Shown: positions 1,100 to 61,075, counted from the first letter of the stretch. The stretch is 64,000 nucleotides of DNA from Octopus sinensis (GCF_006345805.1 NC_043024.1:19034001-19098000), one strand, 5' to 3'. The notes: a model not told the origin generated them from the letters alone. Made by a program: numbers and translations.

Positions 1100-1546
1100 G
1101 GCGACGAGCTGGCAGAAACGTTAGCACACTGGGTGAAATGCATAGCTGTATTTCATCTGCCGTTACGTTCTGAGTTCAAATTCCACCGAGGTCGACTTTG
1201 CCTTTCATCCTTTCAGGGTCTATAAATTAAGTACCAGTTACACACTGGGGTCGATATAATCGACTTAATCCATTTGTCTGTCCTTGTTTGTCCCCTCTAT
1301 GTTGAGCCCCTTGTGGGCAATAAAGAAATAAGAAATGTTAGCACGCCAGGTGAAATGTGTAGCCATATTTCATCTACCGTTTTGTTCTGAGTTCAAATCC
1401 TGCCAAGGTTGACTTTGCCTTTCATCCTTTTGGGGTCGATTAAATAAGTACCAGTTATGCACTGGAGTTGATGTAATCGACTTAATCCGTTTGTCTGTCC
1501 TTGTTTGTCCCCTCTATGTTTAGCCCCTTGTGGGTAATAAAGAAAT
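1100..1546 (+). mobile_element. tRNA-derived SINE family B, two tandem copies
   Basis: A-box-like TGGCAGAA, B-box-like GAGTTCAAATTCC, central GTCGACTTTGCCTTTCATCC...AAGTACCAG, end TAAAGAAATA. Confidence 0.85.
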
Positions 1547-1726
1547 ATATAAAGGCTACTATTACCCACATGGTGAGTTGGTTCATGCTGGAAGATGATG
1601 TAAATGGTTGATGTAGCATTTGGTGCCATGTGGTCAATGTGGAGCAGTTGACAAATGTGACGGTGCCGGGCAATTTAATGTGGAACAATGGACACAGTAT
1701 TTGGTGTCAAGGAAAACGGTAATAAT

Positions 1727-2008
1727 ATGACCAAATACTGCATGTACTCCATCCCATGCAGTTGTGGTAGGTTATACAGAGGTAAAACATGCCACCTCCT
1801 CAAAATAGGGGTAGAGGAACATTGCAAAGCTGTGACATGAGGAGATATTGATAAATCGGGTATAGCTGATCATGTATGGAAAAATGGAGACCTCCTCCCC
1901 CTGTGGGATGAAGTTAAAATAATAGACAGAGAACACCACTGGAAAATATGAAAACTAAAAGAAGGCGCACATATGCTAGGACACAACAACCTCTTAATCA
2001 GACTATGA
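1727..2008 (+). pseudogene. Penelope-like element GIY-YIG endonuclease fragment
   Basis: Manual translation MYSIPCSCGRLYRGKT...EEH...SGIADHVW...WDEVKIIDREHHWKI*KLKE; in-frame TGA stops consistent with CGA decay. Confidence 0.8.
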
Positions 2009-5419: not shown

Positions 5420-5703
5420 TAAGTTACCAGCATCGCCTTACTGGCACCTGTGCCGGTGGCATGTGTAAAAAGATTCGAGAGAGGTCATTGCCAGTACCGC
5501 CTGATTGGCACCAGTGCTGGTGGCACGTAAAAGCACCCACTACACTCTCGGAGTGGTTGGCTTTAGGAAGGGCATCCAGCTGTAGAAACTCTGCCAGATT
5601 AAGACTGAAGCCTGGTGCAGCCATCTGGTTTGCCAGCCCTCAGTCAAATCGTCCAACCCATGCTAGCATGGAAAACGGACGTTAAACGATGATGATGATG
5701 ATG
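5420..5703 (+). mobile_element. Family A (RTE 3' UTR copy) with (GAT)n tail
   Basis: GGAAGGGCATCCAGC...CCAACCCATGCTAGCATGGAAAACGGACGTTAAACGATGATGAT. Confidence 0.85.
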
Positions 5704-6517: not shown

Positions 6518-6552
6518 TGCTTTCATCCACATTCAACAGTGCTAACCCCAAT

Positions 6553-7157
6553 ACTATTTCTTTATTACCCACAAGGGGCTAAACATAGAGGGGGCAAACA
6601 AGGACACACAAACAGATTAAGTCGATTACATCAACCCCAGTGCGTAACCGGTATTTATTTAATCGACCCCAAAAGAATGAAAGGCAAAGTCGAACTTGGC
6701 AGAATTTGAACTCAGAACATAGCGGCAGACAAAATACTTATTTCTTCACTACCCACAAGGGGCCAAACATAGAGGGGACAAACAAGGACAGACAAATGGA
6801 TTAAGTCAATTACATCGACCCCAGTGCATAACTGGTACTTATTTAATCGACCCCGAAAGGATGAAAGGTGAAAGGCAAAGTCAGCCTCGGCGGAATTTGA
6901 ACTCAGAATGTAACGGCAGACGAAATCCTATTTCTTTACTACCCACAAGGGGCTAAACACAGAGGGGACAAACAAGGACACAGATTAAGTTGATTACATC
7001 GACCCCAGTGCATAACTGGTACTTAATTTATCGACCCCGAAAGGATGAAAGGCAAAGTCGACCTTGGCGGAATTTGAACTCAGAACGTAACGGCAGACGA
7101 AATACTGCTAAGCATTTCGCCCGGCGTGCTAACGATTCTGCCAGCTCATCGCCTCCC
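6553..7157 (-). mobile_element. SINE family B head-to-tail trimer
   Basis: One full copy (6926-7157) followed on the minus strand by two copies lacking the A-box head. Confidence 0.85.
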
Positions 7158-12651: not shown

Positions 12652-12948
12652 ATATAATTATAATTAAGGGTGGTGGAGGGACAATGCCTATATGCTAGAA
12701 GTAGATGTCAAATGTCTACAAACCACTATAAATTTGTCCTCCTTTTTGAAACAAGTCTGAATGTGAGGAAATGAACAAGAAGATTTTTAAAATTTTGAAC
12801 AGCTGAATTTTATAAATCTTCTTGTTCATTTCCTCGCATTCAGACTTGTGTAAAAAAGTAGGATAAATTAGAGTGGTTTGTAGACATTTGACATCTATTT
12901 CTAGCATACAGGCATTGTCCCTTCAGCACCCTTAATTATAATTATATA
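12652..12948. repeat. Long imperfect palindrome (~297 bp fold-back)
   Basis: Arms of about 145 bp are reverse complements; apex TTGAACAGCTGAA. Confidence 0.9.
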
Positions 12949-13258
12949 TATATATATATATATTATATATATTATATATATTATATATATATATAGCAAT
13001 TAAGGACAACTACTTAATAAGGAAAACTTAACAAGAAATTGTCAGGTAGATAGCGTGAAAACCTCATAAGAGAAAAAATTTCGAAAATAATTATTTCTTA
13101 TTGAACATATTAATTTATATATAGAGGGCATTATACATACATGCCAGAGGCATTATACATACATGCCACACGCTAAGAGGGACAATTAGTCATTTCTACC
13201 AAAAATATTACTAATCCCACCGAATGCAATTTTTCAAAGTAAGACGTTTAAAGAATAT

Positions 13259-13306
13259 AGACCTGTATCACAGTGATTTCATACTTACGTATTCATCAGC
13301 AGGCCT
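13259..13306 (-). ncRNA. Type I hammerhead ribozyme L1
   Basis: AGGCCTG-CTGATGA-ATAC GTAA GTAT-GAAA-TCAC T GTGA-TA-CAGGTCT. Confidence 0.88.
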
Positions 13307-13733
13307 GAATGTATTATAAATAAACAACGACCCTGCCCCGCTTAAGCCGATCAGCTAACTGATCAACATCAACGAAGCACATGGGTGAGTTTACATATAT
13401 TACATCCGGATAAATGGCAAACTTTTACGAATTGCATTTCGGGAGAGGAAAATTTTTTTCGGAATAAAAATTAGCAATTAAGGACAACTACTTAATAAGG
13501 AAAACTTAACAAGAAATTGTCAGGTAGATAGCGTGAAAACCTCATAAGAGAAAAAATTTCGAAAATATTATTTCTTATTGAACATATTAATTTATATATA
13601 GAGGGCATTATACATACATGCAGAAGGCATTATACATACATGCCACACCTAAGAGGGACAATTAGTCATTTCTACCAAAAATATTACTAATCCCACCGAA
13701 TGCAATTTTTCAAAGTAAGACGTTTAAAAATAT

Positions 13734-13781
13734 AGACCTGTATCACAGTGATTTCATACTTACGTATTCATCAGCAGGCCT
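13734..13781 (-). ncRNA. Type I hammerhead ribozyme L2
   Basis: Identical motif. Confidence 0.88.
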
Positions 13782-14211
13782 GAATGTATTATAATAAACA
13801 ACGACCCTGCCCCGCTTAAGCCGATCAGCTAACTGATCAACATCAACGAAGCACATGGGTGAGTTTACATATATTACATCCGGATAAATGGCAAACTTTT
13901 ACGAATTGCATTTCGGGAGAGGAAAGGTTTTTTTGGAATAAAAATTTAGCAATTAAGGACAACTACTTAATAAGGAAAACTTAACAAGAAATTGTCAGGT
14001 AGATAGCGTGAAAACCTCATAAGAGAAAAAATTTCGAAAATAATTATTTCTTATTGAACATATTAATTTATATATAGAGGGCATTATACATACATGCCAG
14101 AAGGCATTATACATACATGCCACACGCTAATAGGGACAATTAGTCATTTCTACCAAAAATATTACTAATCCCACCGAATGCAATTTTTCAAAGTAAGACG
14201 TTTAAAAATAT

Positions 14212-14259
14212 AGACCTGTATCACAGTGATTTCATACTTACGTATTCATCAGCAGGCCT
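14212..14259 (-). ncRNA. Type I hammerhead ribozyme L3
   Basis: Identical motif. Confidence 0.88.
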
Positions 14260-14682
14260 GAAGGTATTATAAATAAACAACGACCCTGCCCCGCTTAAGC
14301 CGATCAGCTAACTGATCAACATCAACGAAGCACATGGCGTGTGGCATGTATGTATAATGCCTTCTGGCATGTATGTATAATGCCCTCTATATATAAATTA
14401 ATATGTTCAATAAGAAATAATTATTTTCGAAATTTTTTCTCTTATGAGGTTTTCACGCTATCTACCTGACAATTTCTTGTTAAGTTTTCCTTATTAAGTA
14501 GTTGTCCTTAATTGCTAAATTTTTATTCCGAAAAAACTTTTCCTCTCCCGAAATGCAATTCGTAAAAGTTTGCCATTTATCCGGATGTAATATATGTAAA
14601 CTCACCCATGGCTTCGTTGATGTTGATCAGTTAGCTGATCGGCTTAAGCGGGGCAGGGTCGTTGTTTATTTATAATACATTC

Positions 14683-14729
14683 AGGCCTGCTGATGAATAC
14701 GTAAGTATGAAATCACTGTGATACGGTCT
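14683..14729 (+). ncRNA. Type I hammerhead ribozyme R1 (1-nt deletion in stem I 3' strand)
   Basis: Core intact; CGGTCT instead of CAGGTCT. Confidence 0.75.
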
Positions 14730-15156
14730 ATATTTTTTAAACGTCTTACTTTGAAAAATTGCATTCGGTGGGATTAGTAATATTTTTGGTAGAAAGGACT
14801 AATGTCCCTCTTAGCGTGTGGCATGTATGTATAATGCCTTCTGGCATGTATGTATAATGCCCTCTATATATAATTAATATGTTCAATAAGAAATAATTAT
14901 TTTCGAAATTTTTCTCTTATGAGGTTTTCACGCTATCTACCTGACAATTTCTTGTTAAGTTTTCCTTATTAAATAGTTGTCCTTAATTGCTAAATTTTTA
15001 TTCCGAAAAAACTTTTCCTCTCCCGAAATGCAATTCGTAAAAGTTGCCATTTATCCGGATGTAATATATGTAAACTCACCCATGTGCGTCGTTGATGTTG
15101 ATCAGTTAGCTGATCGGCTTAAGCGGGGCAGGGTCGTTGTTTATTATAATACATTC

Positions 15157-15204
15157 AGGCCTGCTGATGAATACGTAAGTATGAAATCACTGTGATACAG
15201 GTCT
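15157..15204 (+). ncRNA. Type I hammerhead ribozyme R2
   Basis: Intact motif; predicted cut between 15197 and 15198. Confidence 0.88.
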
Positions 15205-15632
15205 ATATTTTTTAAACGTCTTACTTTGAAAAATTGCATTCGGTGGGATTAGTAATATTTTTGGTAGAAATGACTAATTGTCCCTCTTAGCGTGTGGCAT
15301 GTATGTATAATGCCTTCTGGCATGTATGTATAATGCCCTCTATATATAAATTAATATGTTCAATAAGAAATATTATTTTCGAAATTTTTTCTCTTATGAG
15401 GTTTTCACGCTATCTACCTGACAATTTCTTGTTAAGTTTTCCTTATTAATAGTTGTCCTTAATTGCTAAATTTTTATTCCGAAAAAACTTTTCCTCTCCC
15501 GAAATGCATTCGTAAAAGTTTGCCATTTATCCGGATGTAATATATGTAACTCACCCATGTGCTTCGTTGATGTTGATCAGTTAGCTGATCGGCTTAAGCG
15601 GGGCAGGGTCGTTGTTTATTTATAATACATTC

Positions 15633-15679
15633 AGGCCTGCTGATGAATACGTAAGTATGAATCACTGTGATACAGGTCT
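15633..15679 (+). ncRNA. Type I hammerhead ribozyme R3 (GAAA reads GAA; inactive or consensus error)
   Basis: GTATGAATCAC at 15656-15665. Confidence 0.65.
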
Positions 15680-16107
15680 ATATTTTTTAAACGTCTTACT
15701 TTGAAAAATTGCATTCGGTGGGATTAGTAATATTTTTGGTAGAAAGGACTAATTGTCCCTCTTAGCGTGTGGCATGTATGTATAATGCCTTCTGGCATGT
15801 ATGTATAATGCCCTCTATATATAAATTAATATGTTCAATAAGAATAATTATTTTCGAAATTTTTTCTCTTATGAGGTTTTCACGCTATCTACCTGACAAT
15901 TTCTTGTTAAGTTTTCCTTATTAATAGTTGTCCTTAATTGCTAAATTTTTATTCGAAAAAACTTTTCCTCTCCCGAAATGCAATTCGTAAAAGTTTGCCA
16001 TTTATCCGGATGTAATATATGTAAACTCACCCATGTGCGTCGTTGATGTTGATCAGTTAGCTGATCGGCTTAAGCGGGGCAGGGTCGTTGTTTATTATAA
16101 TACATTC

Positions 16108-16155
16108 AGGCCTGCTGATGAATACGTAAGTATGAAATCACTGTGATACAGGTCT
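16108..16155 (+). ncRNA. Type I hammerhead ribozyme R4
   Basis: Intact motif. Confidence 0.88.
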
Positions 16156-16585
16156 ATATTTTTTAAACGTCTTACTTTGAAAAATTGCATTCGTGGGATT
16201 AGTAATATTTTTGGTAGAAATGACTAATTGTCCCTCTTAGCGTGTGGCATGTATGTATAATGCCTTCTGGCATGTATGTATAATGCCCTCTATATATAAA
16301 TTAATATGTTCAATAAGAATAATTATTTTCGAAATTTTTTCTCTTATGAGGTTTTCACGCTATCTACCTGACAATTTCTTGTTAAGTTTTCCTTATTAAA
16401 TAGTTGTCCTTAATTGCTAAATTTTTATTCCGAAAAAACTTTTCCTCTCCCGAAATGCAATTCGTAAAAGTTTGCCATTTATCCGGATGTAATATATGTA
16501 AACTCACCCATGTGCATCGTTGATGTTGATCAGTTAGCTGATCGGCTTAAGCGGGGCAGGGTCGTTGTTTATTTATAATACATTC

Positions 16586-16633
16586 AGGCCTGCTGATGAA
16601 TACGTAAGTATGAAATCACTGTGATACAGGTCT
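16586..16633 (+). ncRNA. Type I hammerhead ribozyme R5
   Basis: Intact motif; predicted cut after 16626. Confidence 0.88.
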
Positions 16634-17065
16634 ATATTTTTTAAACGTCTTACTTTGAAAAATTGCATTCGGTGGGAATAGTAATATTTTTGGTAGAAAT
16701 GACTAATTGTCCCTCTTAGCGTGTGGCATGTATGTATAATGCCTTCTGGCATGTATGTATAATGCCCTCTATATATAAATTAATATGTTCAATAAGAAAT
16801 AATTATTTTCGAAATTTTTTCTCTTATGAGGTTTTCACGCTATCTACCTGACAATTTCTTGTTAAGTTTTCCTTATTAAATAGTTGTCCTTAATTGCTAA
16901 ATTTTTATTCCGAAAAAACTTTTCCTCTCCGGAAATGCAATTCGTAAAAGTTTGCCATTTATCCGGATGTAATATATGTAAACTCACCCATGTGCTTCGT
17001 TGATGTTGATCAGTTAGCTGATCGGCTTAAGCGGGGCAGGGTCGTTGTTTATTTATAATACATTC

Positions 17066-17113
17066 AGGCCTGCTGATGAATACGTAAGTATGAAATCACT
17101 GTGATACAGGTCT
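17066..17113 (+). ncRNA. Type I hammerhead ribozyme R6
   Basis: Intact motif; predicted cut after 17106. Confidence 0.88.
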
Positions 17114-17544
17114 ATATTTTTTAAACGTCTTACTTTGAAAAATTGCATTCGGTGGGATTAGTAATATTTTTGGTAGAAATGACTAATTGTCCCTATTAGC
17201 GTGTGGCATGTATGTATAATGCCTTCTGGCATGTATGTATAATGCCCTCTATATATAAATTAATATGTTCAATAAGAAATAATTATTTTCGAAATTTTTT
17301 CTCTTATGAGGTTTTCACGCTATCTACCTGACAATTTCTTGTTAAGTTTTCCTTATTAAATAGTTGTCCTTAATTGCTAAATTTTTATTCCGAAAAAACT
17401 TTTCCTCTCCCGAAATGCAATTCGTAAAAGTTTGCCATTAACCGGATGTAATATATGTAAACTCACCCATGTGCTTCGTTGATGTTGATCAGTTAGCTGA
17501 TCGGCTTAAGCGGGGCAGGGTCGTTGTTTATTTATAATACATTC

Positions 17545-17592
17545 AGGCCTGCTGATGAATACGTAAGTATGAAATCACTGTGATACAGGTCT
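17545..17592 (+). ncRNA. Type I hammerhead ribozyme R7
   Basis: Intact motif; predicted cut after 17585. Confidence 0.88.
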
Positions 17593-17751
17593 ATATTTTT
17601 TAAACGTCTTACTTTGAAAAATTGCATTCGGTGGGATTAGTAATATTTTTGGTAGAAATGACTAATTGTCCCTCTTAGCGTGTGGCATGTATGTATAATG
17701 CCTTCTGGCATGTATGTATAATGCCCTCTATATATATATATATATATAATG

Positions 17752-17793
<42 letters not shown>

Positions 17794-17804
17794 GTATATA
17801 TATG

Positions 17805-18005
17805 ATCTGGCAGTGTTTCTACAGCTGGATGCCCTTCCTAACGCCCACCACTCCATGAGTGTAGTGGGTGCTTTTTATGTGCCACCGGGACGGAGGCCAG
17901 TCAGGGCGGTGCTGGCAATGGCCACGTTCGGATGGTTCTCTTACGTGCCACCGGCACTGGTATCACAGCTACAATTTCCATTGATGTTGATCGATTTTGA
18001 TTTTG
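17805..18005 (-). mobile_element. Family A internal fragment (RTE 3' UTR) flanked by (TA)n
   Basis: ATCTGGCAGTGTTTCTACAGCTGGATGCCCTTCCTAACGCC matches 20274-20315. Confidence 0.8.
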
Positions 18006-19309: not shown

Positions 19310-19350
<41 letters not shown>

Positions 19351-19416
19351 TATTGTTATATTTTGGAATATATAGATATATATAAACGTATATATATATA
19401 CACATACATATATATA

Positions 19417-19467
<51 letters not shown>

Positions 19468-19484
19468 TATATATATATACACAC

Positions 19485-19520
<36 letters not shown>

Positions 19521-19861
19521 TAGATAGATATGAATATAAAAAGCAGCAAAAGACAATGTTTTGTATTTCATAATCCTACATGTAGCAAGTAAAAACTTGG
19601 GGACACATTGTATACATGCATATATAGATATATGAATATACATGTGTGTGTGTGTAAATATCTATAGATATATCTACTTACACACACACACACACATACA
19701 CATGCATACATACATATATACATATCTATGTACACACTAACATACATAATTATACATATTTGTACATACATATATGTATGTTTCTCTCTCTCTCTCTCTC
19801 TCTCTATATAATATATATATATAATATATATATATATATTATATATATATAATATATACAC

Positions 19862-19956
<95 letters not shown>

Positions 19957-19963
19957 TATACAC

Positions 19964-20005
<42 letters not shown>

Positions 20006-20061
20006 TATATATATACACATATACATATATATATATATATACACATACATACACACATATA

Positions 20062-20097
<36 letters not shown>

Positions 20098-20168
20098 CAC
20101 ACATATATATAATAATATATGTATATATACACACACACACACACATATATATGTATATATATATATAT
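19310..20168. repeat. Compound (TA)n/(CA)n/(TC)n microsatellite field
   Basis: Directly visible. Confidence 0.95.
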
Positions 20169-22052
20169 CATCATCATCATCATCATCATTTAGCGTCCGT
20201 TTTCCATGCTAGCATGGGTTGGACGGTTCTACTGGGGTCTGTGAAGCCAGAAGGCTTCATCAGGCCCAGTCAAATCTGGCAGTGTTTCTACGGCTGGATG
20301 CCCTTCCTAACGCCAACCACTCCGTGAGTGTAGTGGGTGCTTTTTACGTGCCACCCGCACTGGTGCCAGACAGAGCTGGCAAACGGCCACGAACGGATGG
20401 TGCTTTTTATGTGCCACCGGCACGAGGGCCAGCCGAGGCTGGCAACGGACACGAAACGGGGCGGTGCTGGCAACGGTCGCGAAACGGAAAGTTCTCTTAC
20501 ATGCCACCGGCACTGGTAACACATCTGCAATTTCCATTGATCGATTTCCATTCTGATCCTCACTTGCCTAAATGGGTCTTCACAAGCAGAGTTTCGACAT
20601 GCCACCGGCACTGGTGGCACATCCGCAATTTCCATTGATCGATTTCGATTCTGATCCTCACTTGCCTCAACACGTCTTCACAAGTAGAGTTTTGTGTCCC
20701 AAGAAGGGAAGGTATGCATACGTAGGCTGGCTCCATCCCATGTAGAAGGCCACGGGTTGTGGACTCACTTGTCCTGCCGGGTCTTCTCGCGCACAGCACA
20801 CTTCCAGAGGTCTCGGTCTCTAGTCATTTCCTCAGTGAGACCTAAAGTTTGAAGGTCGTGCTTCACCACCTCGTCCCAGGTTTTCCTGGGTCTGCTTCTT
20901 CCACAGGTTCCCTCAACTGCTAGGGTGTGGCACTTTTTCACACAACTATCTTCATCCATTCTCGCCACATGACCATACCAGCGCAAACGTCTCTCTTGCA
21001 CACCACAACTGATGCTTCTTAGGTCCAGCTTTTCTCTCAAGGTACTTTCACTCTGCCGAGTGTGAGTACCGGCATTACACATCCATCGGAGCATACTGGC
21101 TTCATTTCTAGCGAGCTTACGCATATCCTCAGCAGTCACGGCCCATGTTTCACTGCCATGTAGCATGGCCGTTCGTACACACGCATCATACAGTCTGCCT
21201 TTCACTCTGTGCGAGAGGCCTTTTGTCACCAGCAGAGGTAAGAGCTCTCTGAACTTTGCCCAAGCTATTCTTACTCTAGCAGTTACACTTTCAGCACACC
21301 CGCCCCCGCTGCTGACTTGGTCACCTAGGTAACGGAAACTATCAACTATTTCTAGTTTTTCTCCCTGGAAAGTGACGGAAGTTGGTCTCAGAGCATTTTC
21401 AGTGTTTATTGTTCCTGAGCATCTGCCACATACAAAACCATCTTCCTAGTTAGCCTTCCTTTGACATTGCTGCATCTCTTATGTGTCCATAGCTTACACT
21501 TGGTGCATCTTATAGAGTTTCTACCTACACCTTTTCTACAGATCGAGCAGGGCCATCTACCTGAAGGTGTTTGTGATTTGTCTACCTTCCTACTGATTAC
21601 GACTTTGGTTTTAGCTAGATTGACTCTGAGGCCCTTCGATTCTAATCCTTGTTTCCACACCTGAAACTTCTCCTCCAGTTCTGATAGCGACTCAGCAATT
21701 AGAGCAAGGTCATCAGCATAGAGGAGCTCCCAAGGGCATCCTGTCTTGAATTCCTCCGTTATTGCCTGGAGGACTATGATAAATAGGAGGGGGCTGAGTA
21801 CTGAGCCTTGGTGGACCCCTACCTCTACCCGGAATTCTTCACTGTACTCATTTTCAACCCTCACCCTACTAGCGGCGTCCCTATACATGGCCCGCACAGC
21901 TCTCACTAACCATTCATCTATCCCTAGTTTTCTCATTGCCCACCAGATAAGGGATCGGGGGACCCTGTCGAAGGCTTTCTCCATGTCAACAAAAGCCAGG
22001 TACAGGGGCTTATCTTTGGCTAGGTATTTCTCCTGCAGCTGCCTTACCAGGA
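20169..22052 (-). mobile_element. 5'-truncated RTE-clade LINE with ~600-bp 3' UTR and (GAT)n tail
   Basis: RT motifs AFVDMEKAFD, GVHQGSVLSPLLF, LLYADD; C-terminus RGRSRPRKTW-like; candidate 16-bp TSD ATATATATATATATCA at 20155-20170 and 22053-22068. Confidence 0.92.
20765..22050 (-). pseudogene. RTE ORF2 remnant: reverse transcriptase, PHD-type C4HC3 finger and thumb, split by one 1-bp deletion near 21436
   Basis: Track ORFs 21406-21984 and 20765-21229 join into one frame (…RKMVFVCGRCSG…VDSFRYLGD…ARVRIAWAKFREL…) if one T is restored. Confidence 0.88.
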
Positions 22053-48482: not shown

Positions 48483-49756
48483 TATCATCATCATTATTGA
48501 CAATCATCATCATCATCAACATCATTATCATCATCATCATGATCATCATCATCATCATCATCAACATCATTATCATCATCATTATTGACATCATCATCAT
48601 CATCATCAACATCATTATCATCATCATCATGATCATGATCATCATCATCATCAACATCATTATCATCATCATTATTGACATCATCATCATCATCATCAAC
48701 ATCATCATCATCAACATCATGATCATCAACATCATCATCATCAACATCATTATCATCATCATTATTGACATCATCATCATCATCAACATCATTATCATCA
48801 TCATCATGATCATCAACATCATCATCATCAACATCATTATCATCAACATCATTATCATCATCATCATCATCAACATCATCATCATCAACATCATCATCAT
48901 CAACATCATCATCATCATCATCAACATCATTATCATCATCATCATCATTATCAACATCATTATCATCATCATCATCATCATCATCAACATCATTATCATC
49001 ATCATTATTGACATCATCATCATCATCATCAACATCATCATCATCAACATCATGATCATCAACATCATCATCATCAACATCATTATCATCATCATTATTG
49101 ACATCATCATCATCATCATCAACATCATTATCATCATCATCATGATCATCAACATCATCATCATCAACATCATTATCATCAACATCATCATCATCAACAT
49201 CATCATCATCAACATCATCATCATCAACATCATCATCATCATCATCAACATCATTATCATCATCATCATCATTATCAACATCATTATCATCATCATCATC
49301 ATCATCATCAACATCATCATCATCATCATTATCATCATCATTATCATCATCAACATCATCATCATCATCATCGTCATCATCATCAACATCATCATCATCA
49401 TCATTATCATCATCATTATCATCATCAACATCATCATCATCATCATCATCATCAACATCATCATCATCATCATTATCATCATCATTATCATCATCAACAT
49501 CATCATCATCATCATCGTCATCATCATCAACGTCATCATCATCATCATCAACATCATTATCATCATCATCATCATCATCAACATCATTATCATCATCATT
49601 ATTGACATCATCATCATCATCATCATCATCATTATCATCATCATTATCATCATCAACATCATCATCATCATCATCGTCATCATCATCAACGTCATCATCA
49701 TCATCATTATTGACATCATCATCATCATCATCAACATCATTATCATCATCATCATG

Positions 49757-49793
<37 letters not shown>

Positions 49794-49803
49794 ACATCAT
49801 TGT
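47793..49803. repeat. 2-kb (ATC)n tract with higher-order periodicity
   Basis: Recurrent ATTATTGAC...AAC...ATGATC blocks. Confidence 0.95.
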
Positions 49804-50367: not shown

Positions 50368-50782
50368 CTTATTTCTTTACTACCCACAAGGGGCTAAACA
50401 CAGAGAGGACAAACAAGGACAGACAAACGGATTAAGTCGATTATATCGACCCCAGTGCATAACTGGTACTTATTCAATCGACCCCGAAAGGATGAAAGGC
50501 AAAGTCGACCTCGGCGGAATTTGAACTCAGAAAGTAGTGGCAGACAAAATACCTATTTCTTTACTACCCACAAGGGGCTAAACATAGAGGGAGCAAACAA
50601 GGACAGACAAACGGATTAAATCGATTATATTGACACCAGTGCATAACTGGTACTTATTTAATCAACCCCAAAAGGATGAAAGGCAAAGTCGGCCTTGGGA
50701 GAATTTGAACTCAGAATGTAGTGGCAGATGAAATACCGATAAGCATTTCGCCCAACGTGCTAACGATCCTGCCAGCTCGTAC
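50368..50782 (-). mobile_element. SINE family B head-to-tail dimer
   Basis: Full copy plus head-less copy. Confidence 0.85.
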
Positions 50783-51537: not shown

Positions 51538-52510
51538 CCACCACCACCACTGCTGCCGCCACCACCGCTGCCATCACTGCTGCCGCTGCCACCACCACCA
51601 TCATGACCACCACCACCACCACTGCCACTGCCACCACTACCACCACTGCCACCACCACCACCACCACCACCACCATCACCTTCACCAGCACCTCCACCAC
51701 CACCACCATCACCTTCACCAGCACCTCCACCACCACCACCACCACCACCACCATCACCTTCACCAGCACCTCCACCACCACCACCACCACCACCACTGCT
51801 GCCGCTGCCACCACCACCACCACTGCCACCACCATCACCATCATAACCACCACCACCACCACTGCCACTGCCACCACTACCACCACTGCCACCACCACCA
51901 CCACCACCACCACCATCACCTCTACCACCACCACCACCACCACCACCATCACCTTCACCAGCACCTCCACCACCACCACCACCACCACCACCACCACTGC
52001 TGCCGCTGCTACCACCACCACTGCTGCCGCTGCCACCACCACCACCACTGCCACCACCACCACCACTGCCACCACCATCACCACCACCACCGCTACCACC
52101 ACTTCCACCACCACCGCCACTTCCACCACCACCACCACCACCACCACCACCGCTACTGCCACTTCCACCACCGCCACCATCACCACCACCAACGCTACCA
52201 CCACTTCCACCACCACCACCGCCACTTCCACCACCACCACCACCACCACCACCACCACCACCACCACCACCACCACCACTTCCACCACCACCGCCACTTC
52301 CACCACCACCACCACCACCACCACCACCACCACCACCACCATCACCACACCACCACCACCACCACCGCTACCACCACCACCTCCCCACCACCGCCACGCC
52401 ACCACCACCACCACCACCACCACCACCACCACCACCACCACCACCACCACCACCACCACCACCACCACCGCTACCACCACCTCCACCACCACCGCCACTG
52501 CCACCAATAA
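51538..52510. repeat. (ACC)n-rich tract
   Basis: Directly visible. Confidence 0.95.
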
Positions 52511-52637: not shown

Positions 52638-53340
52638 GGAAAGAGCTCTTTTCTTCTTCTTCTTCTTCTTCTCCTCCTCCTCCTCCTCTTCTTCTTCTTC
52701 TACTTCTTCTTCTTCTCCTTCTCTTCCTCCTCCTTCTTCGTCTTCTTCTTCTTCTTCTTCTCTCTTCCTCCTCCTTCTTTGTCTTCTTCTTCTTCTTCTT
52801 CTTCTTCTTCTTCTTCTCCTTCTCTTCCTCCTCCTTCTTCGTCTTCTTCTTCTTCTTCTTCTCTTCCTCCTCCTTCTTTGTCTTCTTCTTCTTCTTCTAC
52901 TTCTTCTTCTTCTTCTTCTCTTCCTCCTCCTTCTTCGTCTTCTTCTTCTTCTTCTTCTTCTTCTTCTCCTTCTCTTCCTCCTCCTTCTTCGTCTTCTTCT
53001 TCTTCTTCTTCTTCTCTTCCTCCTCCTTCTTTGTCTTCGTCTTCTTCTTCTACTTCTTCTTCTCCTTCTCTTCCTCCTCCTTCTTCGTCTTCTTCTTCTT
53101 CTTCTTCTTCTCTTCCTCCTTCTTCTTCCAATTCTTCCTCACCTTCTTCCCCTTCTCCTTTCCTCCTCCCCCTCCTCCTCTTCCCCTTCTTCCAATGACA
53201 ATGGTGATGACAATGATGATAATGGTGAAGATGGTGACAATAGCAATAATGACGATGATGATAATTATGATGATGGTAATAATGATGATGATGATGGTGA
53301 TGATGATGATGAAGATGAAGGCAACAACGACAACAATGAA
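52638..53340. repeat. (CTT/CCT)n polypyrimidine tract with higher-order unit, then (GAT)n
   Basis: Directly visible. Confidence 0.95.
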
Positions 53341-56293: not shown

Positions 56294-56850
56294 TCACAGT
56301 ACTTCATGGTAGACAATATTTTGTGTGCATGTCACACCACGTTTTTGGCCTTGTCTGTTATCCCAATTGAGTGTCATAACTCTTACTTTGATATTGTTCA
56401 TAGCTCGTACTCTTGAAAATGCGCAACATATAATTGACCACGAGAAAATACCAGTTGAGACAAATGTATTCCAACTGTTTCAAATGTTTGCCCTTCAGCC
56501 TTATTAATTGTCATTGAATATGCAAGTCGAAGTGGAAATTGAAGTCTGTTTAGTGTGAATGGAATATTTGCATCACTTGGGCTAAGTTTAATTCTGGGAA
56601 TTATAACTGTACGATCTCTGTTGGAGCCGGTTACCAATTATGCCTCTACACAATGTTCATGAAGTCTTTGCACTTTCATGCAAGTTCCATTAAATAATCC
56701 TTGACTGATTGAAAGATTTCGTAGCAGCATTGTTGAGGCGATGAGGAGGCATACCAGGTGGAGTGAGCGAGTTTATGAATTCAAATAGATAGTTCTGAAC
56801 CTCCTCTTCATTATTGTAGGATACTGAATTTGTGCCTAAGAACATTTGGT
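56294..56850 (-). pseudogene. Helitron RepHel PIF1-like helicase C-terminal fragment
   Basis: EFINSLTPPGMPPHRL, MLLRNLSISQGLFNGT, IPRIKL...QFPLRLAYSMTINKAEGQT...GQLYVA, FSR...NIVYHEVL* across frameshifts. Confidence 0.9.
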
Positions 56851-56961
56851 AAGGAAAATAAGAAAAAATAAAAAAATATAATAAATTAAAAATTAAAAGA
56901 AGATAAAACATACGGAAGCTTGTGCAGGAACATAGTAAAAATGTGGATTCTAGCCATGATC

Positions 56962-57392
56962 TTAGGGAGTCCAAAACCGTAACAGATATTTTGTCACATG
57001 TGGACATGATCCAAAAAGTTCAGTTCTTGAATTTAGACATGTAGCAGGGTCCAAGGAACTTTTCCACATGAACCATCTTCCCATATTACAAAGACCCCAC
57101 TTGCCACTACACTTTGGTAAAAGGTTTACACTTGGCTAAGATCTTTCAGTAAATTCTGTAGTTGCCACTTTGTTCTTTTAAGAACCATATATAACTGGAT
57201 AATTTGGTAGTTTTCCATTTATTCCAGTGTCTGAAGTTTAAGGTATGATTGTTGAACCTTGCTTTGAAATTTCTCTCTGTGAGACCCACATATCTCTTTG
57301 ACAAAACTGTGTTATTAGCATTCATAGAAATTACTGTGGCTTCATAAATGATAGCCTCAGTCATACAGGCTCCATTTAGTGGGCAGTATGTA
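56962..57392 (-). pseudogene. Penelope-like GIY-YIG endonuclease fragment (second family)
   Basis: CPLNGAC...IIYEATV...RYVGLTERNFKARFNNH...LSSYIWFLK...LC...LNSRTEL...C.H..KYLL. Confidence 0.82.
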
Positions 57393-57504: not shown

Positions 57505-57700
57505 AATGGCACGTAAAAAGCACTCACTACACTCTCAGAGTGGTTGGCATTAGGAAGGGCATCCAGCTGTAGAAACTCTGCCAGATCAAGATTGTAGCCT
57601 AGTGCAGCCATCTGGTTTGCTAGCCCTCAGTCAAAATCGTCCAACCCATGCTAGCATGGAAAGCAGACGTTAAACGATGATGATGTTGATGATGATGATA
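57505..57700 (+). mobile_element. Family A (RTE 3' UTR copy)
   Basis: Match to family A with (GAT)n tail. Confidence 0.85.
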
Positions 57701-58861: not shown

Positions 58862-59995
58862 TCAGCTGAAACTGGCTCTGGCTCTGAGTACAAATGTCTT
58901 GTTATCATAAGTTTTGAATTAAAATCTTCCACCAAACCTTTGTCACAATGTATGTTCCTAAAACTAGCTTAATAATAACCAAGTAATTTTACTAAATTCT
59001 TTGTTATATTTAAAATTAATTGAAAGAAACACAGAGCATCTCAACAGGAATATGGTAACAAAGGTTTAAAATATATAATAGGGAAACAATTCTTAACGCT
59101 TTTGATACCAACCTGCCTGAAACTGCCTCTGGTTCTGTAGTACAAATGTCTTGTTTTCATAAGTTTTGAAATAAAAACCTTCCACCAAACCTTAGTCACA
59201 AATACTGTTCCTAACACTAGCTGAATGATAACTAAGTTATTTTACTAAATTCTTTGTTATAATTAAAATTAATTGAAAGAAACACACAGCAATTCAGCAG
59301 AAATATGGTAACAAAAGGTTTAAAATATATAATAGAGAAACAATTCTTTTGATACCAACCTGGCTGAAACCGCCTCTGGTTCTGAGTACAAATGTCTTGT
59401 TTTCATAAGTTTTGAATTGAAATCTTCCACCAAACCTTTGTCATAATGTGTTCCTAAAACTAACTGAATGATAACTGAGTAATTTTATTAAATTCTTTAT
59501 TATATTTAAAATTAATTGAAGGAAATACAGAGCATAGGTGCAGGAGTGGCTGTGTGGTAAGTAGCTTGCTAACCAACCACATGGTTCCGGGTTCAGTCCC
59601 ACTGCGTGGCAGCTTGGGCAAGTGTCTTCTGCTATAGCCTCGGCCCGACCAATGCCTTGTGAGTGGATTTGGTAGATGGAAACTGAAAGAAGCCCGTCGT
59701 ATATATGTGTATGTATATATGTGTATGTATATATGTGTATGTATATATGTGTATGTTTGTGTGTTGTGTTTGTCATCCCCCCAACATCACTTGACAATTG
59801 ATGCTGGTTTGTTTACATCCCTGTAACTTAGCGGTTTGGCAAAAGAGACTGATAGAATAAGTGCTGGGCTTACAAAAGAATAAGTCCTGGGGTCGAGTTT
59901 CTCCATTAAAGGCGGTGCTCCAGCATGGCCGCAGTCAAATGTCTGAAACAAGTAAAAGAGTAAAAGAGCATCTCAAAATAAATACAGTAACGGAA
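58862..59995. repeat. Tandem ~250-bp unit x3 (MITE-like, TTAA-bounded), third copy interrupted by a SINE
   Basis: TCTGAGTACAAATGTCTTG near 58883, 59134, 59381; ends TTAACGCTTTTGATACCA and TGGTAACAAAGGTTTAA look like TIRs. Confidence 0.7.
59537..59971 (+). mobile_element. SINE family C with 7-bp TSD AGAGCAT
   Basis: TSD at 59529-59535 and 59965-59971. Confidence 0.88.
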
Positions 59996-60458: not shown

Positions 60459-61075
60459 CGCAGGAGTGGCTGTGTGGTAAGTAGCTTGCTAACCAACCAC
60501 ATGGTTCCGGGTTCAGTCCCACTGTGTGGCATCTTGGGCAAGTGTCTTCTGCTATAACCTCAGGCCGACCAAAGCCTTGTGAGCGGATTTGGTAGACGGA
60601 AACTGTAAGAAACCTGTTGTATATATGTATGCCGATGCCAGAATCCCCTGGCACCTGTGCCGGTGGCACGTAAAAAGCACCCACTACACTCGCGGAGTGG
60701 TTGGCGTTAGGAAGGGCATCCAGCTGTAGAAACACTGCCAGATCAGACTGGAGCCTGGTGCAGCCCCTAGCTTCCCAGACTCCGGTCGAACTGTCCAACC
60801 CATGCTAGCATGGAAAACGGACGTTAAATGATGATGATGAGGATAATGATGATGATGTGTATATGTTTGTGTGTCTGTGTTTGTCCCTCTAGCATTGCTT
60901 GACAACCGATGCTGGTGTGTTTACGTCCCCGTCACTTAGCGGTTCGGCAAAAGTGACCGATAGAATAAGTACTGGGCTTTCAAAAGAATAAGTCCAGGGG
61001 TCGATTTGCTCGACTAAAGGCGGTACTCCAGCATGGCCGCAGTCAAATGACTGAAACAAGTAAAAGAGTAAGAGT
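60459..61075 (+). mobile_element. SINE family C with nested family A insertion (60631-60856) in its internal microsatellite
   Basis: Both halves of C flank a family A copy with (GAT)n tail. Confidence 0.85.

What the first reader, a model, noticed from the sequence alone, without database searches (positions are those of the whole stretch)
12994..17729. Tandem array of ~478-bp units, each with a complete hammerhead ribozyme: a candidate cephalopod non-LTR retrozyme/circRNA system
Seen: ten copies of AGGCCTG-CTGATGA-ATAC GTAA GTAT-GAAA-TCAC T GTGA-TA-CAGGTCT, spaced 474-480 bp apart. This has the full CUGANGA/GAAA/UH core, a 7-bp stem I (one G-U), a 4-bp stem II with a GNRA loop and a self-complementary stem III. 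Eight copies are intact and two have 1-nt deletions. The unit has no meaningful ORF and units are nearly identical. Established: non-LTR retrozymes of amphibians, cnidarians and bivalves are tandem non-coding repeats with type I HHRs; their transcripts self-cleave to monomers that circularise and are thought to be mobilised by Penelope-like elements. Inference: this array yields a ~479-nt monomer (e.g. 16627-17106) and possibly a circRNA. That is longer than the monomers I recall for animal retrozymes, and I do not recall a cephalopod example. Penelope GIY-YIG fossils in this window (1727, 56962) show that candidate partner families exist in the genome.
Basis: partly seen in the sequence, partly recalled or inferred. 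Interest (0 to 1): 0.92.

Follow-up and report, generated by a model that had tools for sequence, protein, structure and literature searches.

The report
Hammerhead-ribozyme tandem repeat (retrozyme) in octopus-like DNA
A 4.7-kb block of ~478-bp non-coding repeats, each carrying a complete self-cleaving hammerhead ribozyme motif, looks like a new (probably octopus) example of the known animal "retrozyme" mobile elements, and the shape of its insertion resembles that left by Penelope-like retroelements.

Summary
The repeat is real: 12994-17736, period 474-480 bp, units 96-99% identical, ten hammerhead (HHR) motifs, eight intact. 2.8 units carry the HHR on the minus strand (12994-14337) and 7.1 units carry it on the plus strand (14337-17736).

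The motif has every invariant HHR core base, an open 7-bp helix I (type I), a 4-bp helix II with a GUAA loop, and an 11-nt near-palindromic helix III. Chance gives 0.08 lax matches per window. A single motif is predicted to misfold. A natural transcript spanning two motifs folds into the double hammerhead (inter-copy helix III pair probabilities 0.82-0.92).

No Rfam hammerhead model matches, even at E<=10. The motif has A10.1-U11.1 instead of the usual G-C.

Both arms are 5'-truncated, meet with a 1-nt overlap, and end 3'-outward in a (TA)n microsatellite. This matches published Penelope-like insertion architecture.

The unit is non-coding, 33% GC, and its RNA is predicted to be highly structured (z = -6.4).

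Best reading: a non-LTR retrozyme, a new member of a known kind. Transcription, cleavage, circles and dispersal are untested, and no other copy was found. The size is not unusual. The "Penelope" fossil at 56962 is a Helitron; the one at 1727 holds.

The parts
12943..12995 (.). Left (TA)n microsatellite flank. It abuts the RNA-sense 3' end of the left arm with 2-nt TA microhomology (GCTA|TATA).
   Evidence: TRF; junction analysis
12994..14337 (-). Left arm: 2.8 units with the HHR sense on the minus strand. It runs from unit position 362 (at 14337) to about 282 (at 12994), so it is 5'-truncated at the centre.
13259..13306 (-). Intact 48-nt type I hammerhead motif; cleavage between 13266 and 13265.
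13734..13781 (-). Intact hammerhead motif; cleavage between 13741 and 13740.
14212..14259 (-). Intact hammerhead motif; cleavage between 14219 and 14218.
14337..14337 (.). Head-to-head junction of the two arms. There is a 1-nt overlap and no filler. It is asymmetric (unit position 362 meets unit position 93), so it is not a simple fold-back palindrome.
14337..17736 (+). Right arm: 7.1 units with the HHR sense on the plus strand. It runs from unit position 93 to about 152-160 and ends inside the unit's own TATATATA, which merges into (TA)n.
14683..14729 (+). Hammerhead motif with a 1-nt deletion in the helix I 3' strand (CAGGTCT -> CGGTCT).
15157..15204 (+). Intact hammerhead motif; cleavage after 15197.
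15633..15679 (+). Hammerhead motif with a core deletion (GAAA -> GAA), predicted inactive if the deletion is real.
16108..16155 (+). Intact hammerhead motif; cleavage after 16148.
16586..16633 (+). Intact hammerhead motif; cleavage after 16626. It forms a predicted double hammerhead with the next copy.
16627..17106 (+). Example 480-nt monomer (cleavage to cleavage). Linear MFE is -131.6 kcal/mol (z = -6.4), circular MFE is -124.9 kcal/mol, and 65% of bases are paired. Helix I closes the molecule.
17066..17113 (+). Intact hammerhead motif; cleavage after 17106.
17545..17592 (+). Intact hammerhead motif; cleavage after 17585.
17729..17803 (.). Right (TA)n microsatellite flank. It is followed at 17804 by an interspersed SINE-like repeat.
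1688..1840 (+). Context only: a Penelope-like GIY-YIG endonuclease fossil with stops downstream, showing that a candidate partner family exists in this genome.

Best explanation
This is an insertion of a non-coding, hammerhead-bearing tandem repeat of the animal 'non-LTR retrozyme' kind, in a genome that is probably an octopod's.

Proposed mechanism:
1. The HHR-sense strand is transcribed as a multimer (inferred).
2. Neighbouring hammerheads pair through their near-palindromic helix III (AUCACUGUGAU) into a double hammerhead. [quoted passage not shown] The fold is predicted; the cleavage is inferred.
3. Helix I holds the two ends of the monomer together, so a host RtcB-type tRNA ligase can circularise it (inferred by analogy with published retrozymes).
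4. A Penelope-like element's RT/GIY-YIG endonuclease nicks both strands of a (TA)n microsatellite. Both 3'-OH ends prime on retrozyme RNA through TA microhomology (twin priming). Multi-unit cDNAs are copied from a circular or multimeric template and are joined head to head. The anatomy is shown; the process is inferred.
For: Hammerhead motif:
- All invariant core bases are present: C3 U4 G5 A6 U7 G8 A9, G12 A13 A14, A15.1-U16.1 and H17 = A.
- Helix I is 7 bp and open, which makes the motif type I. Helix II is 4 bp with a GUAA loop.
- My descriptor finds exactly the 8 intact copies and nothing else in the 64-kb window. Shuffled windows give 0.08 hits.

Folding:
- For a single motif the catalytic fold (-9.7 kcal/mol) loses to a non-catalytic fold (-12.1). 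Two motifs co-fold into the double hammerhead at -31.1.
- In the natural 561-nt transcript 16570-17130 the MFE structure is the double hammerhead. Inter-copy helix III pair probabilities are 0.82-0.92 and both cores stay unpaired.
- This is the published behaviour of most metazoan type I HHRs (PMC4209133; PMC7229834).
- The monomer RNA has z = -6.4 in HHR sense against -4.4 in antisense, and 65% of bases are paired when folded as a circle.

Family features:
- GC is 33%.
- There is no ORF over 59 aa and no homologue for the ORF tested.
- There is no tRNA gene and no other Rfam family.

Insertion anatomy:
- Both arms are 5'-truncated, meet at 14337 with a 1-nt overlap, and have their RNA-sense 3' ends outward in (TA)n with 2-nt and about 9-nt microhomology.
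- (TA)n covers only 2-4% of the window.
- Craig et al. 2021 (PMC8557442) list the hallmarks of Penelope-like insertions: partial or multicopy tandems, 5' truncation, an inverted 5'-truncated copy adjacent at the 5' end, and a microsatellite target bias ((TA)n reported for the Naiad clade).
- A Penelope-like endonuclease fossil lies in the window.
Against: - No Rfam hammerhead model matches, even at E<=10 on a 101-nt slice.
- The base pair 10.1-11.1 is A-U, whereas G-C is 'highly conserved' in canonical and PLE hammerheads (PMC4209133). No loop 1/loop 2 tertiary contact is recognisable. Real activity may therefore be low.
- There is no second locus in the window. I found no relatives in the metagenome or viral collections, only one chance hit. 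No unit ORF is on record. Dispersal and transcription are therefore unshown.
- The unit shows no similarity to the one PLE fossil in the window.
- Several variants are shared by non-adjacent units. This does not fit a simple rolling-circle copy of one circle followed by independent decay.
- The assembly contains an N gap and many homopolymer indels, so the inversion needs confirmation from reads.
Confidence: 0.7

Rival explanations
1. It is an ordinary local satellite whose unit happens to hold a hammerhead-like motif, or a long-dead one. It grew by unequal crossing-over and part of it was later inverted. No RNA processing or retrotransposition is involved.
For: - It is a single locus in this window and no relatives were found in any reachable collection.
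- Rfam hammerhead models do not match.
- The 10.1-11.1 pair is A-U.
- Variants shared among non-adjacent units suggest array turnover.
- The HHR region is not significantly better conserved than the rest of the unit (2 of 48 variable columns against 34 of 432).
Against: - A complete core with three correctly placed helices is expected about 0.08 times per 64-kb window even with a lax descriptor.
- The near-palindromic helix III gives a high-probability double hammerhead in the natural multimer.
- The RNA is strongly structured, more so in the HHR sense.
- Both outer ends fall in (TA)n with microhomology and both inner ends are truncated. Unequal crossing-over does not predict this.
Confidence: 0.15
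2. It is a retrozyme-like element, but it is mobilised by a LINE-type reverse transcriptase rather than a Penelope-like element, through classical L1-style twin priming. Alternatively, local amplification and not retrotransposition made this array.
For: - LINE-type RVT_1 fragments lie in the window at 21406-21984 and 40380-41135.
- Twin priming is a known LINE phenomenon (my background knowledge).
- Cervera and de la Pena 2020 leave 'LINEs or PLEs' open as partners.
- The unit has no similarity to the PLE fossil in the window.
Against: - The arms have no poly(A) or LINE-like 3' tail, and they end at two different unit positions.
- A hammerhead, multicopy tandems, an adjacent inverted 5'-truncated copy and a microsatellite target are together the described PLE signature.
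- Retrozymes are related to PLE pLTRs in Xenopus.
Confidence: 0.12
3. The inverted left arm is an assembly artefact, and the real locus is one head-to-tail array.
For: - Tandem and inverted PLE-like structures are known to cause assembly problems (PMC8557442).
- The window has a 100-N scaffold gap.
- The units differ by many 1-nt homopolymer indels, typical of long-read consensus error.
Against: - The junction is asymmetric (unit position 362 against 93), so it is not a fold-back palindrome.
- The left arm has its own private variants (columns 11 and 254).
- The left arm joins a unique left flank through its own (TA)n.
Confidence: 0.1

Closest known systems
Metazoan non-LTR retrozymes (Cervera and de la Pena 2020, NAR, PMC7229834: coral, mussel, axolotl)
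   Same: [quoted passage not shown]
- The RNA is predicted to be highly self-paired.
- Helix I closes the monomer.
- Penelope-like elements co-occur in the genome.
   Different: - The unit (474-480 nt) is longer than the ~170-400 nt RNAs that paper describes, but inside later ranges (51-972 bp).
- The hammerhead has A10.1-U11.1, U15.2-A16.2, an AUA cleavage site and a long (11-nt) near-palindromic helix III.
- It is not recognised by Rfam.
- RNA expression and circles are not shown here.
Dolichopoda cave-cricket pDo500 satellite hammerhead (PMC2837043)
   Same: - A ~500-bp satellite unit with an embedded hammerhead.
- Both single- and double-hammerhead modes have been proposed, and multimer transcripts are processed to monomers.
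   Different: - The sequence is unrelated and the phylum differs.
- pDo500 has cross-species conservation and in vitro cleavage data. This locus has neither.
Newt/axolotl satellite 2 hammerheads (HHR_Amex1/2)
   Same: A weak helix III with palindromic character, so that the ribozyme works poorly alone and well as a dimer in tandem transcripts.
   Different: - Amphibian helix III is 1-2 bp with a palindromic tetraloop. Here it is a 5+5 near-palindrome around a single U.
- Amphibian motifs keep G10.1-C11.1 and the loop 1/loop 2 contacts.
Penelope-like elements: pLTR min-hammerheads and insertion architecture (PMC4209133, PMC8557442)
   Same: - Type I hammerheads that act as dimers.
- Multicopy head-to-tail insertions, 5' truncation, an inverted 5'-truncated copy adjacent at the 5' end, and microsatellite targets ((TA)n reported for the Naiad clade).
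   Different: - The unit has no RT/EN ORF.
- Its hammerhead has a full helix III and a 4-bp helix II, whereas PLE min-HHRs have a 7-8-bp helix II and no helix III.
- No 30-40-bp 'tail' was seen.
- There is no sequence similarity to the PLE fossil in this window.
Plant LTR retrozymes (PMC4918200)
   Same: Non-autonomous, non-coding, hammerhead-processed elements with a circular RNA intermediate.
   Different: Plant elements have type III hammerheads inside LTRs, a PBS and PPT, 4-bp TSDs, high GC and Gypsy partners. None of these is present here.

Membership tests
Hammerhead ribozyme, type I | Invariant catalytic core: C3 U4 G5 A6 N7 G8 A9, G12 A13 A14, A15.1-U16.1 and H17 (not G) | tested here: met
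   CUGAUGA ... GAA A...U A is present in 9 of 10 copies; one copy has GAA instead of GAAA.
Hammerhead ribozyme, type I | Three helices around the core, with helix I open and helices II and III closed | tested here: met
   Helix I is 7 bp including one G-U, and open. Helix II is 4 bp with a GUAA loop. Helix III as a hairpin is only 4 bp with a triloop (-0.2 kcal/mol), but it forms 10 bp between two copies.
Hammerhead ribozyme, type I | G10.1-C11.1 pair at the base of helix II (highly conserved, not strictly invariant) | tested here: not met
   The pair here is A10.1-U11.1 (read directly from the sequence). Its conservation is stated in PMC4209133.
Hammerhead ribozyme, type I | Loop 1/loop 2 tertiary contacts of canonical metazoan type I motifs | tested here: inconclusive
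   Loop 2 is a GNRA tetraloop. Beyond the 7-bp helix I there is an 8-nt unpaired stretch. No canonical contact can be assigned. Mussel retrozyme HHRs also lack these contacts.
Hammerhead ribozyme, type I | Match to the Rfam hammerhead covariance models | tested here: not met
   No hammerhead hit at gathering score, nor at E<=10 on 5.1 kb or on 101 nt.
Hammerhead ribozyme, type I | Site-specific self-cleavage | not testable with these tools
   Only thermodynamic prediction is available: the double hammerhead is the MFE structure of a two-motif transcript.
Metazoan non-LTR retrozyme | Tandem repeats of roughly 150-450 bp (51-972 bp in later surveys) without LTR, PBS or PPT | tested here: met
   Units of 474-480 bp, in blocks of 2.8 and 7.1 copies.
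Metazoan non-LTR retrozyme | A type I hammerhead in every repeat (the definition of an 'active' retrozyme in Li et al. 2026) | tested here: inconclusive
   8 of 10 motifs are intact. The two defects are 1-nt deletions, in an assembly where 17 of 36 variable columns are such indels.
Metazoan non-LTR retrozyme | Non-coding and low GC (<45-50%) | tested here: met
   GC is 33%. ORFs are at most 59 aa and the one tested has no homologue.
Metazoan non-LTR retrozyme | Monomer RNA is highly self-paired | tested here: met
   MFE -131.6 kcal/mol, z = -6.4; 65% of bases paired as a circle. This is prediction only.
Metazoan non-LTR retrozyme | Expressed as linear and circular monomer RNAs | not testable with these tools
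   No transcriptome of the source organism is reachable. ORF look-ups in Logan/ENA found nothing.
Metazoan non-LTR retrozyme | Multiple dispersed genomic loci (mobility) | not testable with these tools
   Only one 64-kb window is available and it holds no second copy. The collections searched hold no match.
Metazoan non-LTR retrozyme | Co-occurrence with Penelope-like elements in the genome | tested here: met
   A PLE endonuclease fossil lies at 1688-1840. Its best relative is an Octopus sinensis protein, and another relative shows RT followed by the matched C-terminal segment.
Penelope-like-element-type insertion | Head-to-tail multicopy insertion, 5' truncation, an adjacent inverted 5'-truncated copy, and a microsatellite target | tested here: met
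   Anatomy, compared with the description in PMC8557442. It rests on a single locus. The 30-40-bp 'tail' was not seen.

The most novel reading that the evidence does not exclude
This locus may preserve the footprint of how non-LTR retrozymes integrate. Both strands of a (TA)n microsatellite would have been nicked, and each 3'-OH would have primed on retrozyme RNA by TA microhomology. Two multi-unit cDNAs (7.1 and 2.8 units) would then have been copied from a circular or multimeric template and joined head to head. That is the Penelope-like insertion signature, seen here for a retrozyme.

Together with a divergent hammerhead that Rfam misses and that is predicted to depend on pairing with a second copy (A10.1-U11.1, 11-nt near-palindromic helix III), it would mean that cephalopods carry an overlooked retrozyme lineage. 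It would also give insertion-site evidence for the retrozyme-PLE partnership, which has so far rested on co-occurrence and pLTR similarity. In addition, the 1.3-kb inverted arms would form a long dsRNA if read through, a possible ADAR or small-RNA substrate.
Probability: 0.35. Interest if true: 0.6.

Novelty: new member of a known kind. Interest (0 to 1): 0.42.

Why it matters
Tandem repeats that carry a hammerhead are an established class of animal mobile element and make abundant small circular RNAs. In the full-text library I could search, no paper links retrozymes to cephalopods.

If the family is active, it would extend that class to a group already known for unusual RNA biology.

The hammerhead here escapes the Rfam models. 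Motif-based surveys that rely on them would miss it.

The insertion architecture is a (TA)n target, twin 5'-truncated arms and microhomology at both 3' ends. A genome-wide survey of arrays could test this directly as evidence that Penelope-like machinery integrates retrozymes. The retrozyme papers I read do not discuss this point.

Tried and rejected
- Rfam at gathering score and at E<=10, on the whole array and on one motif: no hammerhead and no other credible family.
- Exact and degenerate HHR patterns in the metagenome and viral collections: nothing, apart from one hit in L002. That hit lies in bacterial-looking coding DNA without a helix II and was rejected as chance.
- Unit ORFs looked up as exact proteins, which could have revealed Logan or ENA contigs or transcripts: none on record. 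A homology search with the 51-aa ORF found no candidate.
- Search for PLE-type minimal hammerheads anywhere in the window: none.
- BLAST of the unit against the window for solo copies or pLTR similarity: only low-complexity noise.
- Pfam and PDB on the short GIY-YIG-like pieces: no hit. A search of the 1.84-billion-protein representative library was needed to place 1688-1840.
- Identification of the organism through LINE RT homologues: only unnamed ENA contigs. The Octopus sinensis name came from the PLE fragment's best hit.
- tRNA/SINE-head hypothesis for the unit: ARAGORN finds no tRNA gene.
- Fold-back assembly artefact: rejected as the simple explanation because the junction is asymmetric. 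It is not excluded.

Full report
**1. The observation**

Tandem Repeats Finder reports two adjacent arrays with the same ~478-bp unit. One is at 12994-14337 (period 478, 2.8 copies, 98% matches). The other is at 14337-17736 (period 475, 7.1 copies, 98% matches). Their consensus units are reverse complements of each other.

The 27-nt string CTGATGAATACGTAAGTATGAAATCAC occurs nine times exactly, three on the minus strand and six on the plus strand. None is expected in dinucleotide-preserving shuffles. A fuzzy search for the full 48-nt motif finds ten copies. Eight are identical and intact. The copy at 14683-14729 lacks one A in the 3' strand of helix I. The copy at 15633-15679 has GAA instead of GAAA.

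Units cut at the predicted cleavage site are 474-480 nt long and 95.6-99.0% identical. Of the 36 variable columns, 17 are 1-nt indels, mostly in short homopolymer runs. This looks like long-read consensus error, so the two defective motifs may not be real.

**2. Is it a hammerhead?**

Read in standard numbering, the motif is:
- helix I 5' strand: AGGCCUG
- core: C3 U4 G5 A6 U7 G8 A9
- helix II: AUAC-GUAA-GUAU
- core: G12 A13 A14
- helix III: A15.1 UCAC U GUGA U16.1
- cleavage site: A17, cut 3' of it
- helix I 3' strand: CAGGUCU

Every invariant position is present. Helix I is open, so the motif is type I.

A descriptor I wrote requires the core, helix I of at least 5 bp, helix II of at least 3 bp and helix III of at least 1 bp. 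It finds exactly the eight intact copies and nothing else on either strand of the window. One hundred shuffled windows give a mean of 0.08 hits.

Against this, Rfam does not recognise the motif. There is no hit at gathering score over the window. There is no hammerhead hit at E<=10 over 12800-17900, or over a 101-nt slice around one motif. The likely reason (my inference) is a set of uncommon but permitted bases:
- A10.1-U11.1 instead of the G-C pair that Cervera and de la Pena call highly conserved (PMC4209133)
- U15.2-A16.2
- an AUA cleavage triplet
- no recognisable loop 1/loop 2 contact

**3. How the ribozyme would work**

A 4+4 stem around a single U cannot form as a hairpin. The best hairpin version of helix III is 4 bp with a triloop, worth only -0.2 kcal/mol.

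For one isolated motif, the catalytic fold (-9.7 kcal/mol) loses to a fold in which UGAU of the core pairs with AUCA of helix III (-12.1). Two motifs co-fold into the classical double hammerhead at -31.1 kcal/mol, against -24.2 for two separate monomers.

In the natural 561-nt transcript spanning two neighbouring motifs (16570-17130), the minimum-free-energy structure is again the double hammerhead:
- The two AUCACUGUGAU segments pair with each other, with probabilities of 0.82-0.92.
- Helix I strands are swapped between the copies.
- Helix II forms in both copies.
- Both cores stay unpaired.

This is the published behaviour of most metazoan type I hammerheads. A weak, palindromic helix III gives poor cleavage as a single motif and good cleavage as a dimer in tandem transcripts (PMC4209133; PMC7229834; PMC7761336). 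I therefore predict cleavage of multimers rather than of isolated monomers. This is a thermodynamic prediction, not a measurement.

**4. The unit as an RNA**

- The 480-nt monomer in HHR sense folds to -131.6 kcal/mol (shuffles -95.5 +/- 5.7, z = -6.4).
- The antisense strand folds to -98.0 kcal/mol (z = -4.4).
- Folded as a circle it reaches -124.9 kcal/mol with 65% of bases paired. Helix I closes the molecule and brings the 5' and 3' ends together.
- GC is 33%.
- The longest ORF is 59 aa. A 51-aa ORF present in three units has no homologue among 5.8 billion proteins.
- No tRNA gene and no other Rfam family is present.

These are the features listed for metazoan non-LTR retrozymes: low GC, non-coding, no LTR/PBS/PPT, and highly self-paired RNAs (PMC7229834).

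**5.

Unit coordinates are counted from the cleavage site.
- The right arm runs from position 93 at the centre to about 152-160 at its outer end. There the unit's own CTCTATATATA merges into the flanking (TA)n at 17729-17803.
- The left arm, read in its own sense on the minus strand, runs from position 362 at the centre to about 282. It ends GCTA|TATATA... in the flanking (TA)n at 12943-12995.
- The two 5'-truncated ends meet at 14337 with a 1-nt overlap and no filler.

So both arms point their RNA-sense 3' ends outward into one TA microsatellite, with about 9-nt and 2-nt microhomology. TA repeats cover only 2.2-4.3% of the window. The right (TA)n is followed by an interspersed SINE-like repeat that has at least seven other copies in the window. 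One of these lies about 100 bp downstream of another (TA)n, so the microsatellite was probably there before the insertion.

The junction is asymmetric and the left arm carries private variants. This argues against a simple fold-back assembly artefact but does not exclude misassembly.

Craig et al. 2021 (PMC8557442) describe Penelope-like insertions as follows:
- strongly 5'-truncated
- arranged in partial or multicopy tandems
- biased towards microsatellite targets, with (TA)n reported for the Naiad clade

The architecture here matches that description. It also matches what twin priming on both nicked strands would give (my inference). The retrozyme papers I read do not discuss inverted copies or microsatellite targets.

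**6. What does not fit neatly**

Several variants are shared by non-adjacent units. P1 and P3 share G at columns 74 and 370. P6 and M1 share A at column 89. M1 and M2 share columns 11 and 254. A rolling-circle copy of one circle followed by independent decay predicts only private variants. So either the template was a heterogeneous multimer or the array has since undergone conversion.

The hammerhead region is not measurably better conserved than the rest of the unit. At 98% overall identity this says little.

**7.

- ORF 1688-1840(+) carries a YSIPCSCG..Y.G.T......EEH pattern. I recognise this from background knowledge as the PLE GIY-YIG/CCHH signature. Pfam and PDB give nothing for so short a piece.
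- phmmer against 1.84 billion representatives gives 82 hits for that ORF. The best (72% identity) is XP_036358999.1 of Octopus sinensis. Another hit, P0199, has RVT_1 at residues 71-276 and the matched segment at 425-464. That order, RT followed by a C-terminal endonuclease, is the PLE architecture.
- A PLE fossil is therefore present. The Octopus hit is the only tool-based support for 'cephalopod'.
- The second 'Penelope fossil' at 56962 is not one. ORFs 56398-56637(-) and 56690-57007(-) match the Helitron transposase Helraiser, at residues 1384-1455 (E = 1.5e-19) and 1305-1344 (E = 0.0017).
- A GIY-YIG-like ORF at 57146-57364(-) remains unverified.
- The monomer length is not exceptional. 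pDo500 is ~500 bp (PMC2837043), and retrozyme consensus lengths reach 972 bp.

**8. Relatives elsewhere**

None was found.
- There is no second copy in the window.
- Exact and degenerate HHR patterns in the metagenome and viral collections gave only one chance hit.
- No unit ORF is on record in ENA, Logan or NCBI gene calls.
- No eukaryotic genome collection can be searched by DNA with these tools. Copy number and dispersal, the key tests of mobility, remain open.

**9. Literature**

In the searchable library the only paper holding both 'retrozyme' and 'cephalopod' or 'octopus' is Craig et al. 2021, which is about PLEs and not about cephalopod retrozymes. The supplement of Cervera and de la Pena 2020 held as text does not mention cephalopods. 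Those authors state that such repeats occur 'from molluscs to arthropods' and in most metazoan phyla. A cephalopod example is expected, even if undocumented.

**10. Verdict**

This is a real and statistically secure type I hammerhead, embedded in a non-coding tandem repeat. It meets all sequence-level criteria of a metazoan non-LTR retrozyme. Its ribozyme is predicted to work as a double hammerhead. It is a new member of a known kind.

Three points add moderate interest:
- a divergent hammerhead that Rfam misses
- a probable first cephalopod case
- a single-locus insertion architecture that matches Penelope-like integration

Activity, circles and mobility are all inferred. My confidence in the retrozyme reading is 0.7, and I score interest at 0.42.

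Noticed in passing
window 56398-57007 (-): Helitron (Helraiser-like) helicase fossil. Two ORFs match Helraiser residues 1384-1455 (E = 1.5e-19) and 1305-1344 (E = 0.0017).
   Followed up: yes
window 57146-57364 (-): A 72-aa ORF with a GIY-YIG-like pattern (IIYEATV...KRYVGLTERNFKARFNNH), just upstream of the Helitron fragment. Pfam and PDB give no significant hit, so its identity is open.
   Followed up: partly
window 1688-1840 (+), continuing to about 2000 through stops: Penelope-like GIY-YIG endonuclease fossil. Its best relative (72% identity) is the Octopus sinensis protein XP_036358999.1. No hammerhead, canonical or minimal, lies near it.
   Followed up: yes
window 12994-14337 against 14337-15700: The inverted arms share about 1.3 kb of 97-98% complementary sequence. 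A read-through transcript would fold into a long dsRNA hairpin, a possible ADAR-editing or small-RNA substrate. This is speculation and was not tested.
   Followed up: no
window 12657-12942: The left flank of the array is itself a ~285-bp imperfect palindrome (88% self-complementary), possibly a foldback or MITE-like element.
   Followed up: partly
window 17804-17995; also 20274-20423, 26794-26943, 47540-47691, 5446-5599, 60648-60744, 57507-57587: An interspersed SINE-like repeat starts right after the right (TA)n and has at least seven other copies in the window (78-92% identity). It shares a 12-mer (TTGATGTTGATC) with the retrozyme unit, which is probably chance.
   Followed up: partly
window 21406-21984 (-), 40380-41135 (-), 39461-40258 (-), 36754-37338 (-): LINE-type reverse-transcriptase fragments (RVT_1 at E = 5.6e-20 and 1.4e-22; weak zf-RVT hits). 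The best homologues of the one fragment searched (40380-41135) are about 72% identical and lie on unnamed ENA contigs up to 12.7 Mb long.
   Followed up: partly
window 19313-20168, 34620-35139, 44692-45290, 46634-47174, 47792-49800, 51589-52506, 52647-53160: Very long microsatellites: (TA)~431, several 0.5-1-kb trinucleotide arrays, and a 2-kb array of a 15-mer (ATC-based). They create long spurious ORFs on both strands.
   Followed up: no
window 34310-34409: A run of 100 N (scaffold gap), so the window comes from a scaffolded assembly.
   Followed up: no
window 1114-1547, 6550-7106, 50370-50737, 58865-59534: Other short tandem arrays of 184-253-bp units, which are SINE-like sequences in tandem. 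None carries a hammerhead core.
   Followed up: partly
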